From the NCBI RefSeq assembly GCF_963676685.1, contig NC_092347.1:19282001-19346000 (forward strand): a stretch of DNA of 64,000 bases, in the 5' to 3' direction. The notes under the pieces were generated by a model. The model worked only from the letters and a program-made list of their open reading frames with translations. It made no database searches and was not told the DNA's origin. This document shows, piece by piece, positions 1,641-9,300 of the stretch. The translations under genes and the position numbers were made by a program. Every line of letters begins with the position of its first letter. Position 1 is the first letter of the stretch. Source of the stretch: Mytilus edulis (Eukaryota).

Positions 1641-1973
1641 TGTTGAAGCATTCTTGATTAAGGTATTTCAAACACGCTTCGGGTTCGTTATTCTTTTAAA
1701 AATTGGAATTTTTTCATTCAATTTTTAATGATTTTGAATAGGTTTTGTTTTATTGGCAAATCGGCTTAATAACAACATACTTACATTGAATAGGTTTACC
1801 GTCTAGAATATAATAGGTACGTCTAAAAAAAGTGACAACTCTACGACAGAATCAAGCATTGGATAACCATTGAAGGCGAAACACGACTGAAACACATATT
1901 ATATGCATAATTACTTTAAATATCAGCACATCAATGTTAAATAGGTACATTTGCGGAAGCAATATTTGTTCTT

Positions 1974-2060
1974 CCCTCGACGAGATTTGAACTCATGCTA
2001 ATGGGATATCTAAATAACACCGCCTGCACTTTGTCCTGCGCTCTAGACCACTCGGTCAGC
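1974..2060 (-). mobile_element. Decayed tRNA-derived (Pol III A/B box) SINE-like head
   Basis: Minus strand reads GCTGACCGAGTGGTCTAGAGCG (A-box like) ... GAGTTCAAATCTC (B-box like); no complete cloverleaf evident. Confidence 0.6.
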
Positions 2061-2287
2061 TAAACTGTACTCAAAATTCAGCTTTCGGTGGCCGACTTTT
2101 TACCTTAGTAGAGTATAGAATTCTTACACAGTACATGATGTATAATCCATGAAGATTGATTGGAGATTATCTAAATTATCTATCGAAAAGAATGGTAAGA
2201 TACAGTGTTAATGATAAGTATACGTCTAAACAAGTGGCAACTCTATAACAAACTCATCATAGATACCAGGATTAAAATTTTATATTT

Positions 2288-2331
2288 ACGCCAGACGCGC
2301 GTTTCGTCTACATAAGACTCATCAGTGACGC
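2288..2331 (-). ncRNA. Type I minimal hammerhead ribozyme, intact core
   Basis: Minus strand GCGUCA CUGAUGA GUCU-UAUGU-AGAC GAAA CGCGCG UC^UGGCGU: 6-bp stem I, CUGAUGA, 4-bp stem II, GAAA, short palindromic stem III, GUC cleavage triplet (cut between 2294 and 2293). Confidence 0.9.
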
Positions 2332-2644
2332 TCGAAAAAAAAATGTTTAAAAGGCCAAATAAAGTACGAAGTTGAAGAGCATTGAGGACCAAAATTTGTT
2401 TACCAAATACAGCTAAGGTAATCTATTCCTGAGGAAGAAAAGCCTTAGTTTTTCAAAAATTCAAAGTTTTGTTTACAGTTGATTTATAATTATGAACGTA
2501 TCGATGATAACTCAAGGTTAACACAGAAGTGCTGACTACTAGGCTGGTGATACACTCGGGGAAATAAATCTCCACCAGCAGTGGCATCGACCCAGTTGTT
2601 GCAAATGAACTCACCATAGAAACCAGGATTAAAATTTTATATTT

Positions 2645-2688
2645 ACGCTAGACGCGCGTTTCGTCTACATAAGACACATCGGTTACAC
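2645..2688 (-). ncRNA. Hammerhead ribozyme copy with mutated core (probably inactive)
   Basis: GUGUAA CCGAUGU GUCU-UAUGU-AGAC GAAA CGCGCG UC UAGCGU; CUGAUGA changed to CCGAUGU and stem I weakened. Confidence 0.75.
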
Positions 2689-3009
2689 TCAAATTAAAAA
2701 ATGTTTAAAAGGCCAAATAAAGTACGAAGTTGAAGAGCATTGAGGACCAAAAATTCCTAAAAGTTTTACCAAGTACAGCTAAGGTTATATATTCCTGAGG
2801 AGGAAAAGCCTTAGATTTTCAAAAATTCAAAGTTTTGTTAACAGTTAATTTATAATTATGAACATATCGTTGATAACTCAAGTCAACGCAGAAGTGCTGA
2901 CTACTGGGCTGGTGATACCCTCGGGGAAATAAATCTCCACCAGCAGTGGCATCGACCCAGTTGTTGCAAATAAACTCAATATAGATACCAGGATTCAAAT
3001 TTCATATTT

Positions 3010-3053
3010 ATGCCAGACGCGCGTTTCGTCTACATAAGACTCATCAGTGACGA
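3010..3053 (-). ncRNA. Type I minimal hammerhead ribozyme, intact core, shorter stem I
   Basis: UCGUCA CUGAUGA GUCU-UAUGU-AGAC GAAA CGCGCG UC^UGGCAU; 4-bp stem I; cut between 3016 and 3015. Confidence 0.85.
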
Positions 3054-4741
3054 TTAAATCAAAAAATGTTTAAACATATCCAATTGTATAAACGAAAGCG
3101 ACTAGCAATATACAACATTATGATCTGGTTGACATTTATGAATATTATAGATTTTAATACATTTTGGCTTCAAACACCTTTGGTCACAAGCTTGGACCAG
3201 AGGCACATGTTGTGGGTACAGAATTCCTAAGATTTATAGGTGTTTTTTTCACTTGTCGTCCTCTTTTCTTGTTATGGTATCTGCGAATGTGATTAGTCAT
3301 CAGGCATTTTACTTACCAAGGACAACAAGAGGGGTACCACCTGTAGAGAAAGAACTATGCACCTGAGTTTACTCGATTGGTGTTAGTCCGTTTGTCTTAT
3401 TGTTTCTGTAGCTATGCTGTTTCTTTTTATTTTCATTTTTAAATCAATTATCAAACAAGGGACAAATTTTAACTAAAAAACAGACAAAAAACAATACAAT
3501 TACTGAAAAAAAAATTCCTTAGACAATATATTAAACTAGTTTCAAAACAGGTTATGTTAACTCTGTCGTTGCCATTCATCTTATGCGTATATCTTTGTGT
3601 TATCTTATCAAAGGTTTGAATTAAACAATTAATAAATGATAAAATAGTAAATGAACATCAGACTGTTTTATTCAATTTATTTCTGATGGTTTTTTTTTAT
3701 TTTGTGTTTTGTTTTATTACTTCAGACCATGTTACATTTGTCTTCCTTGAATTAATTATATACATTTACATCTAAAGTGTGCTTAACTCATTTCTTATTG
3801 AAGGTGTTATGCAAATAAAAATGTTTTCACTGTTTTTTCGCTAACTTCTTGTGATGATCAGTTAAGCTTGCAAGTTTATGACATAAAAATTATTATATTA
3901 TACTTTGTTTATATTAATTATTGAATTATATGCAGATAGGTGTCAGACAAGTCGGAAACACTGTGTGAGGACTGTAAATTATTACAATGTTGTGAATACA
4001 TGAAAATAGCCTGTCTAGACGAAACAAATAACAAACTTATCTTTTCAAAGATATTCTCATTTCGGTTTGAAACAAAAAAATTACTTGTGATCGGTATTTT
4101 ATTGTTGTTGTCATTTTTATTGTTTTTTTTTATAGATTATATCGAAAGTAGCATTGATATAATCTGTAAAAAAAAACACCTTATTTGTTGATTGTTTCAG
4201 TTTTATTACATTTTTAACTGTAACACCATTATTTCACCAAAGAGGAAACGTTTTTAGTTCCACCAAATTCTTGATGTGTTTGTTCTATTTCACTGTTAAA
4301 ATGCACTATCTGACTTGATCAGGACATGTAATGCTCATTCAATTTTTTTTTCACTTTTTCTATCATTAGACCTTTTTACATATTTAACTATATGGTATGA
4401 ATGAGTTCAGCACATTGACGAGGGCAACACAGTCTCATGTAGCTGCTAGCATTCTTGTCTATTCGTCTTCGGTGAAGAGTTGTCTCACTAGATTTTCTTA
4501 TGTTTATTGTCTGCGGTCAATGTTATTGGGCTTAACTATGGTTTTTTTTAGGATTGATGTAAACATGTATTAGAGAAACTTTTTTTAAGCAGGAGATTTT
4601 ATTTCATAATGCTGTTTTCCTTTTTGTTATATCTGTATATATTTGGTACCAATAAATGAGTTTTCTGGTTTTTCTATCAGTTCATGTTTTATTGTACATT
4701 TTTCATGGATTTATATTTTGTTTGTTTCTACATATCGTCTT

Positions 4742-9151: not shown

Positions 9152-9300
9152 AATAAGTTAATAGTTATCAAAGGTACCAGGCTTATAATTTTAAAAACCA
9201 CACGCGCGTTTCGTCTACATAAGATTCATCAATTACGCTTAGATCGAATAATAAGTTTGAAAGCCAAAACAAGTACAAAGTTGAAGAGCATTGAGGATCA
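9152..9300 (-). mobile_element. Solo decayed retrozyme fragment with mutated hammerhead (~9195-9238)
   Basis: TACCAGG...ACGCGCGTTTCGTCTACATAAGATTCATCAATTACGC...AAGTTGAAGAGCATTGAGGA matches the 2250 unit; core UUGAUGA, GUG triplet. Confidence 0.8.

What the first reader, a model, noticed from the sequence alone, without database searches (positions are those of the whole stretch)
2250..3075. Tandem hammerhead-ribozyme array (retrozyme-like, potential self-processing circular RNA) on the minus strand
Seen: ~360-bp tandem units, each with a minus-strand motif having every element of a type I hammerhead (stem I, CUGAUGA, stem II, GAAA, stem III, GUC). Established: tandem genomic repeats of a few hundred bp with one type I hammerhead per unit define metazoan non-LTR retrozymes, whose transcripts self-cleave to monomers and circularise, and similar minimal hammerheads occur in Penelope-like elements; I recall such elements being reported from Mytilus, so the class is not new although this locus may be unannotated. 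Inference: a protein-free mobile RNA mobilised in trans by a reverse transcriptase.
Basis: partly seen in the sequence, partly recalled or inferred. Interest (0 to 1): 0.9.

Follow-up and report, generated by a model that had tools for sequence, protein, structure and literature searches.

The report
Known mussel hammerhead retrozyme copy
This is an ordinary, partly decayed genomic copy of the hammerhead-ribozyme "retrozyme" repeat already described and tested in Mytilus mussels, one of more than 12,000 such ribozyme copies in this genome.

Summary
Window 2251-3081 is a 2.3-unit tandem array (period 357-365 bp) with three minus-strand type I hammerheads. Two are intact (3053-3010 and 2331-2288; Rfam RF00163 31.7 and 33.0 bits, E about 1e-5). 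The middle one (2688-2645) has core and stem I mutations.

It is the Mytilus non-LTR retrozyme of Cervera and de la Pena (NAR 2020, PMC7229834). Their primers match the window with 0-1 mismatch. Their clone, with the same ribozyme apart from one loop base, self-cleaves and forms circular RNA.

In this 1.37-Gb genome the 32-nt ribozyme core occurs 12,280 times. The scan already holds 217 notes with the words hammerhead and retrozyme, all eight shown from this genome.

Three results go beyond the papers I read:
- Insertions share a fixed 3' end 43-55 nt (mostly 47-49) past the cleavage site. Their 5' ends vary, and no target duplication was detectable. This fits 3'-anchored, Penelope-like reverse transcription of an uncut or re-ligated RNA.
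- Two copies of the ribozyme are predicted to fold best as a double hammerhead.
- No Penelope-like element with a matching tail was found.

Interest is low.

The parts
2251..3081 (-). Whole retrozyme insertion. In RNA sense it starts at unit position about 300 and contains two full units plus a 3' tail of about 43-48 nt.
3010..3053 (-). Hammerhead 1: intact core CUGAUGA / GAAA / GUC. Predicted cut between 3016 and 3015.
   Evidence: (31.7 bits, E 1.8e-5)
2645..2688 (-). Hammerhead 2: defective, with core CCGAUGU and stem I mismatches. The GUC site at 2653-2651 is kept.
   Evidence: 21.6 bits, E 0.038; 2 mismatches
2288..2331 (-). Hammerhead 3: intact core. Predicted cut between 2294 and 2293.
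   Evidence: (33.0 bits, E 6.6e-6)
2651..3015 (-). Unit A, 365 nt, from cleavage site 1 to site 2. GC 36%.
2294..2650 (-). Unit B, 357 nt, from site 2 to site 3. GC 37%. It is 91.9% identical to unit A.
2251..2293 (-). 3' tail after the last cleavage site. It ends at the family's usual insertion terminus (...GAUGAGUUU...).
9176..9300 (-). Second, degenerate solo copy of the same family: unit positions 260 to 29, 78% identity, hammerhead core mutated.

Best explanation
The array is an old genomic insertion of the Mytilus non-LTR retrozyme, a protein-free retroelement of about 365 nt per unit.

How the family works, with the basis for each step:
1. The repeat is transcribed (published for the family; not shown for this locus).
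2. The type I hammerheads cut after GUC. Because helix III is only a 2-bp stem around a palindromic GCGC, two copies most likely pair as a double hammerhead in which each core cuts the other copy's site (predicted here).
3. The 5'-OH and cyclic-phosphate ends are joined by a host RtcB-type ligase to give a circle (published in vitro).
4. A reverse transcriptase supplied in trans, most likely from a Penelope-like element, copies an RNA that is continuous across the cleavage site. That RNA is either a circle or an uncut multimer. Copying starts at a fixed point 43-55 nt (mostly 47-49) 3' of the site and stops at variable points. This gives arrays of more or less than one unit with a common 3' end (DNA pattern shown here; enzyme inferred).

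At this locus two of the three ribozymes are intact. A transcript would therefore be cut at 3016/3015 and 2294/2293, giving a 722-nt piece. In the double-hammerhead mode an intact neighbouring core might also cut site 2651/2650.
For: - Array and three hammerheads.
- Family identity: published primers match with 0-1 mismatch; published clone Mg353 and circRNA sequences.
- Published behaviour of the family: 350-390 bp repeats, about 5000 hammerheads, kobs about 0.1 per min, circRNA seen on northern blots.
- Copy number: the unit has 5955 first-look candidates across 13 numbered contigs (C1-C14, none on C8 or C13). The exact 32-nt core occurs 12,280 times against 0 for the control.
- 3' ends: 43 of 60 arrays (those clear of a locus edge; 63 found in 51 non-redundant loci) end at unit positions 41-60, mostly 47-49, while 5' ends are scattered. 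In a sample taken in genome order, 18 of 30 occurrences of the terminal motif are insertion ends.
- Units within an array are more alike (93.4%) than units between arrays (89.8%).
- Ribozyme folding: the homodimer minimum-energy structure is the double hammerhead at -31.5 kcal/mol, against -20.4 for two monomers. The single hammerhead fold is -4.8 against an alternative fold at -10.2.
- Penelope-like elements with long open frames, some 99.3-99.7% identical, are present in the genome. One carries a minimal hammerhead about 64 nt from its 3' end.
Against:
- The hammerheads fall 1-2 bits under Rfam's cut-off.
- The window's monomers fold no better as circles than shuffled sequences (z 0.0 and +0.9).
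- No target-site duplication was detectable.
- No Penelope-like element with a tail homologous to the retrozyme tail was found.
- The two units differ by 8% and the middle ribozyme is dead, so this copy may be silent.
Confidence: 0.93

Rival explanations
1. It is an ordinary satellite that grew by local duplication and unequal crossing-over. The hammerhead is a passive relic, and no RNA intermediate was involved in placing this copy.
For: The array is tandem, AT-rich and non-coding. Units within arrays are more alike than units between arrays, which local duplication would also produce. No target duplication was found.
Against: The family lies in thousands of short arrays across 13 numbered contigs. 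The arrays share one precise 3' end and have variable 5' ends, including pieces shorter than one unit. Unequal crossing-over does not produce that pattern. Circular RNAs of the family are published.
Confidence: 0.04
2. It is a terminal repeat (pLTR) fragment of an autonomous Penelope-like element rather than a separate non-autonomous element.
For: Penelope-like elements carry hammerheads near their 3' ends and often sit in partial tandems (PMC8557442). A 2026 preprint derives vertebrate retrozymes from such terminal repeats. Such elements abound in this genome.
Against: The 64-kb window has no open frame of 150 aa or more. Flanks upstream of truncated copies are unrelated to one another. The 30 GIY-YIG loci show no homology to the unit apart from two unrelated short insertions. 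The tail of the one hammerhead-bearing element examined does not align with the retrozyme tail.
Confidence: 0.02
3. This particular locus is still a live source of circular RNA and not only a fossil copy. This rival concerns the locus status, not the kind of element.
For: Two of the three ribozymes are intact and 722 nt apart. Half of the sampled genomic hammerheads are intact, so intactness is common.
Against: The units are 8% diverged from each other, and the best other copy is only 91% identical. The middle ribozyme is dead. No promoter or RNA evidence is available.
Confidence: 0.15

Closest known systems
Mytilus galloprovincialis non-LTR retrozyme (Cervera and de la Pena 2020, PMC7229834; clone Mg353)
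   Same: Unit length of 357-365 bp falls within the published 350-390 bp. It has the same ribozyme apart from one loop-2 base and the same long sequence blocks. The published primers match with 0-1 mismatch. It is low in GC, tandem and dispersed.
   Different: Nothing at the level of the family. This copy has a dead middle ribozyme and is about 9-10% from other copies. This assembly holds 12,280 exact core copies, against about 5000 reported from a draft genome.
Newt satellite 2, schistosome and cave-cricket type I hammerhead repeats; Rfam Hammerhead_1 (RF00163)
   Same: Type I topology. The GACGAAACGCGCGUC segment is identical to the Rfam consensus. Helix III is weak and palindromic, which implies cleavage as a dimer.
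   Different: The repeat body is unrelated. Scores are 31.7-33.0 bits, just under the 34-bit cut-off.
Penelope-like elements with 3' hammerheads
   Same: The hammerhead lies a few tens of nt from the insertion's 3' end. 5' truncation is variable, partial tandems occur, and target duplications are weak or absent.
   Different: No reverse transcriptase or endonuclease gene. No preference for (TA)n targets is seen at the 3' junctions. No sequence homology to the two element families examined.
Plant LTR retrozymes
   Same: Non-coding, hammerhead-processed, circular RNA intermediates.
   Different: The plant elements have type III ribozymes in long terminal repeats, with a tRNA primer site, a polypurine tract and 4-bp target duplications. 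None of these is present here.

Membership tests
Metazoan non-LTR retrozyme | Short tandem repeats (about 170-400 bp) with one type I hammerhead per unit | tested here: met
   Period 357-365 bp, 2.3 units, three hammerhead positions
Metazoan non-LTR retrozyme | Conserved catalytic core CUGANGA / GAAA / RUH with helices I-III | tested here: met
   Met in copies 1 and 3. Copy 2 fails (CCGAUGU).
Metazoan non-LTR retrozyme | Low GC (below 45-50%) and no coding capacity | tested here: met
   GC 36-37%; no open frame of 150 aa or more in the window
Metazoan non-LTR retrozyme | No LTR, tRNA primer-binding site or polypurine tract | not tested
   No long terminal repeats were seen in the repeat search. 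Primer site and polypurine tract were not searched for.
Metazoan non-LTR retrozyme | Many dispersed genomic copies | tested here: met
   5955 candidates across 13 numbered contigs; 12,280 exact ribozyme cores
Metazoan non-LTR retrozyme | Self-cleavage of the transcript | not testable with these tools
   Published for clone Mg353, which has the same ribozyme apart from one loop base
Metazoan non-LTR retrozyme | Expression as circular RNA | not testable with these tools
Published for the family by northern blot and RT-PCR.
Mytilus galloprovincialis retrozyme family | Sequence homology along the unit, not only in the ribozyme | tested here: met
   Primer 110R, which lies outside the ribozyme, matches at 2896-2924 (0 mismatches) and 2531-2559 (1 mismatch). 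Primer 109R matches three times with 1 mismatch. Primer 109D does not match within 3 mismatches.
Rfam Hammerhead_1 (RF00163) | Score at or above the 34-bit gathering cut-off | tested here: not met
   33.0, 31.7 and 21.6 bits. Other hammerhead matches in this genome (not checked to belong to this family) reach 34-42 bits.
Penelope-like element (autonomous) | Open frame with reverse transcriptase and GIY-YIG endonuclease | tested here: not met
   No open frame of 150 aa or more in the window. The unit has no homology to the 30 GIY-YIG loci.

The most novel reading that the evidence does not exclude
The mussel retrozyme has a defined 3' start point for reverse transcription, 43-55 nt (mostly 47-49) downstream of the ribozyme cut, at ...GAUGAGUUUAUUU. 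It also has preferred 5' ends, for example near unit position 254-257, which give solo copies of about 150 nt. This would mean that a cis-acting 3' signal next to the hammerhead recruits a Penelope-type enzyme, as in SINE/LINE pairs. It would also mean the template is continuous across the cleavage site. The review of the field states that no conserved motif pointing to the mobilising element was known. I found no paper describing this end structure.
Probability: 0.45. Interest if true: 0.4.

Novelty: already known. Interest (0 to 1): 0.15.

Why it matters
The locus itself adds nothing new. It is one decayed copy of a published, experimentally tested family. It does confirm that the first-stage reader can recognise hammerhead retrozymes from raw sequence. 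The family-level by-product, a fixed 3' terminus with variable 5' ends and no target duplication, could help identify which retrotransposon mobilises animal retrozymes. That question is still open for invertebrates.

Tried and rejected
- Rfam at gathering thresholds found nothing in the window. The permissive search was needed.
- Folding each isolated hammerhead alone did not return the catalytic fold and gave no significant z-score.
- Circular folding of the two window monomers was no better than dinucleotide shuffles. A first script timed out.
No RNA or circle-junction evidence was obtained, read laying was not used, and I did not try another route.
- The target-site duplication search in 28 insertions was negative: mean local score 5.57 against 5.85 for mismatched flank pairs.
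- Pfam found nothing credible in open frames flanking other copies.
- Search for an autonomous partner:
  - Of 30 GIY-YIG loci, two hold short retrozyme pieces, on the opposite strand to the endonuclease.
  - A young element family ends in (TA)n with only a degenerate hammerhead look-alike.
  - A second family has a minimal hammerhead plus a 64-nt tail, but that tail does not align with the retrozyme tail. Rfam sees that hammerhead only weakly.
- Flanks upstream of the 254-257 boundary are not homologous to one another, so that boundary is not a junction with a longer element.
- ARAGORN and Rfam found no tRNA or RNA family in the 3' flank.
- A per-column conservation profile of 48 units was computed and used only for conservation values.

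Full report
**Observation**

Tandem Repeats Finder reports a single array at 2250-3074 with period 365, 2.3 copies and 89% matches. The repeat finder aligns three copies between 2251 and 3081.

The 32-nt hammerhead segment (CUGAUGA, stem II, GAAAC, GCGC, GUC) hits the minus strand three times. It occurs without mismatch at 3047-3016 and 2325-2294, and with two mismatches at 2682-2651. No hit is expected by chance.

Rfam's type I hammerhead model (RF00163) aligns end to end to all three:
- 33.0 bits, E 6.6e-6, at 2331-2288
- 31.7 bits, E 1.8e-5, at 3053-3010
- 21.6 bits, E 0.038, at 2688-2645

All three fall under the 34-bit gathering score, which is why the default search was blank. The middle copy reads CCGAUGU in place of CUGAUGA and has non-standard pairs in stem I, so it should be inactive.

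**What it is**

The unit is a high-copy dispersed repeat of this 1.37-Gb genome. A search with one unit gave 5955 first-look candidates. The scored matches were 83-91% identical and lay across 13 numbered contigs (C1-C14, none on C8 or C13). The exact 32-nt ribozyme core, with one free base in loop 2, occurs 12,280 times against 0 for the reversed control.

The literature search led to Cervera and de la Pena 2020 (PMC7229834). That paper describes M. galloprovincialis repeats of 350-390 bp with about 5000 type I hammerheads. It reports self-cleavage of a genomic clone at about 0.1 per min and abundant circular RNAs in gonad and mantle.

Their primers 109R and 110R match the window with 0-1 mismatch, and 110R lies well outside the ribozyme. 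Primer 109D does not match within three mismatches. Their clone Mg353 and their circRNA sequences share the ribozyme, apart from one loop-2 base, and long blocks of the unit with the window (read by eye).

The window units are 36-37% GC, and the window has no open frame of 150 aa or more. The array is therefore a member of that published family. The scan holds 217 notes with the words hammerhead and retrozyme, and all eight shown come from this genome.

**State of this copy**

The insertion starts, in RNA sense, at unit position about 300. It contains two full units of 365 and 357 nt and ends 43-48 nt after the third cleavage site.

The two units are 91.9% identical. Neighbouring units in some other arrays reach 97-99%, so this is an older copy.

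In 51 non-redundant loci, 41 of 82 hammerheads keep an intact core and stem II. Two intact out of three is therefore typical. A 48-unit alignment shows 90-96% column conservation along the whole unit and 96-98% in the ribozyme.

A second, degenerate solo copy lies at 9300-9176 on the minus strand: unit positions 260 to 29, 78% identity, core mutated.

**How the ribozyme probably acts**

Helix III is only A-U and C-G around a palindromic GCGC.
- For a 48-nt hammerhead alone, the catalytic fold is worth -4.8 kcal/mol, against -10.2 for a competing hairpin.
- For two copies together, the minimum-energy structure is exactly the double hammerhead: an 8-bp intermolecular helix III, intermolecular stems I and intramolecular stems II.
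- That dimer is worth -31.5 kcal/mol, against -20.4 for two separate monomers.

This agrees with the published remark that weak helix III lets many type I hammerheads cleave as dimers but not as monomers.

In a double hammerhead, each core cuts the other copy's site. The 722-nt product (3015 to 2294) is therefore the safe prediction for this locus. A cut at 2651/2650 by a neighbouring intact core is not excluded. It would have to tolerate one C-A mismatch in stem I. This is inference.

**How copies are made**

I mapped array ends in 51 non-redundant loci using a trimer of the unit as query. That gave 63 arrays, and 60 of them lay clear of a locus edge.
- 43 of those 60 arrays end at unit positions 41-60, mostly 47-49, at ...GAUGAGUUUAUUU.
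- The 5' ends are spread over the unit. About ten fall at 254-257 and few fall at 41-140.
- In a sample taken in genome order, 18 of 30 occurrences of the terminal motif are true insertion ends and 12 continue into the next unit.
- Insertions range from under 100 nt to more than 2 kb.
- No target duplication of about 7 bp or more is detectable.
- Units within an array are more alike than units between arrays: 93.4% against 89.8%.

Every insertion crosses at least one cleavage site. The template was therefore continuous there, either an uncut multimer or a re-ligated circle.

A fixed 3' end with variable 5' ends is the signature of 3'-anchored, target-primed reverse transcription. The circle model of the 2020 paper fits if copying starts at a defined internal point. 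I did not find this end structure described in the papers I read.

**The mobilising enzyme**

Penelope-like elements are the published candidates. A 2026 preprint shows that vertebrate retrozymes are related to the terminal repeats of these elements, but it did not test invertebrates.

This genome has many GIY-YIG matches, with open frames up to 1053 aa.
- One family has copies 99.3-99.7% identical, with variable 5' truncation, head-to-head partners and (TA)n targets.
- Another carries a minimal hammerhead about 64 nt from its 3' end. This resembles the retrozyme's layout, but the tails do not align.

The link to Penelope-like elements stays an inference.

**Limits**

The window monomers do not fold better as circles than shuffles.

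**Verdict**

The element is already known and this copy is ordinary and partly decayed. Interest is low. The family-level end structure is the only part that may be new.

Noticed in passing
window 1808-2258 (-): The DNA directly 3' of the array is a copy of another repeat family with 1533 first-look candidates at 72-80% identity, tandem at some loci. By eye it holds a tRNA-like stretch near 2100-1985, though ARAGORN and Rfam report nothing there. A direct repeat of about 30 nt lies at about 2247-2215 and 1850-1815. It may be the tRNA-bearing 440-nt element noted elsewhere in this genome. It shares short motifs (GAUGAGUUU, CAC...UAGACG) with the retrozyme, so the exact junction is uncertain by about 10 nt.
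   Followed up: partly
window 9176-9300 (-): A degenerate, 5'-truncated solo copy of the same retrozyme family with a mutated hammerhead core. It starts near the family's 5'-end hot spot.
   Followed up: partly
L027:1129-1278, L046:1500-1651, L048:119-268, L049:1375-1523 and others: A discrete class of solo copies about 150 nt long (unit 254-257 through the hammerhead to +48). Their upstream flanks are unrelated, so this is a preferred 5' end. It could be a transcription start or a reverse-transcription stop. It remains unexplained.
   Followed up: partly
L072-L090 (for example L079:1277-3258): A very young Penelope-like family (99.3-99.7% identity) with a C-terminal GIY-YIG domain and a 3' UTR of about 200 nt ending in (TA)n. 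It shows variable 5' truncation and head-to-head inverted partners. Its 3' UTR has only a degenerate hammerhead look-alike (UUGAAAA...GAAAGCGCUA).
   Followed up: partly
L087:2040-2125 (-) and 2400-2512 (+): A second Penelope-like family with a minimal hammerhead (CUGAUGA, 5-bp stem II, GAAAGCGCUA) followed by a tail of about 64 nt that ends in (TA)n. It is present as a head-to-head pair. Copies elsewhere in the genome are 96-99% identical.
   Followed up: partly
L046:1411-1651; L069:816-912; L090:155-271: Retrozyme tails lie tail-to-tail with another retrozyme copy, or on the strand opposite to and downstream of a Penelope-like endonuclease region. This could be chance or a shared target preference.
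   Followed up: no
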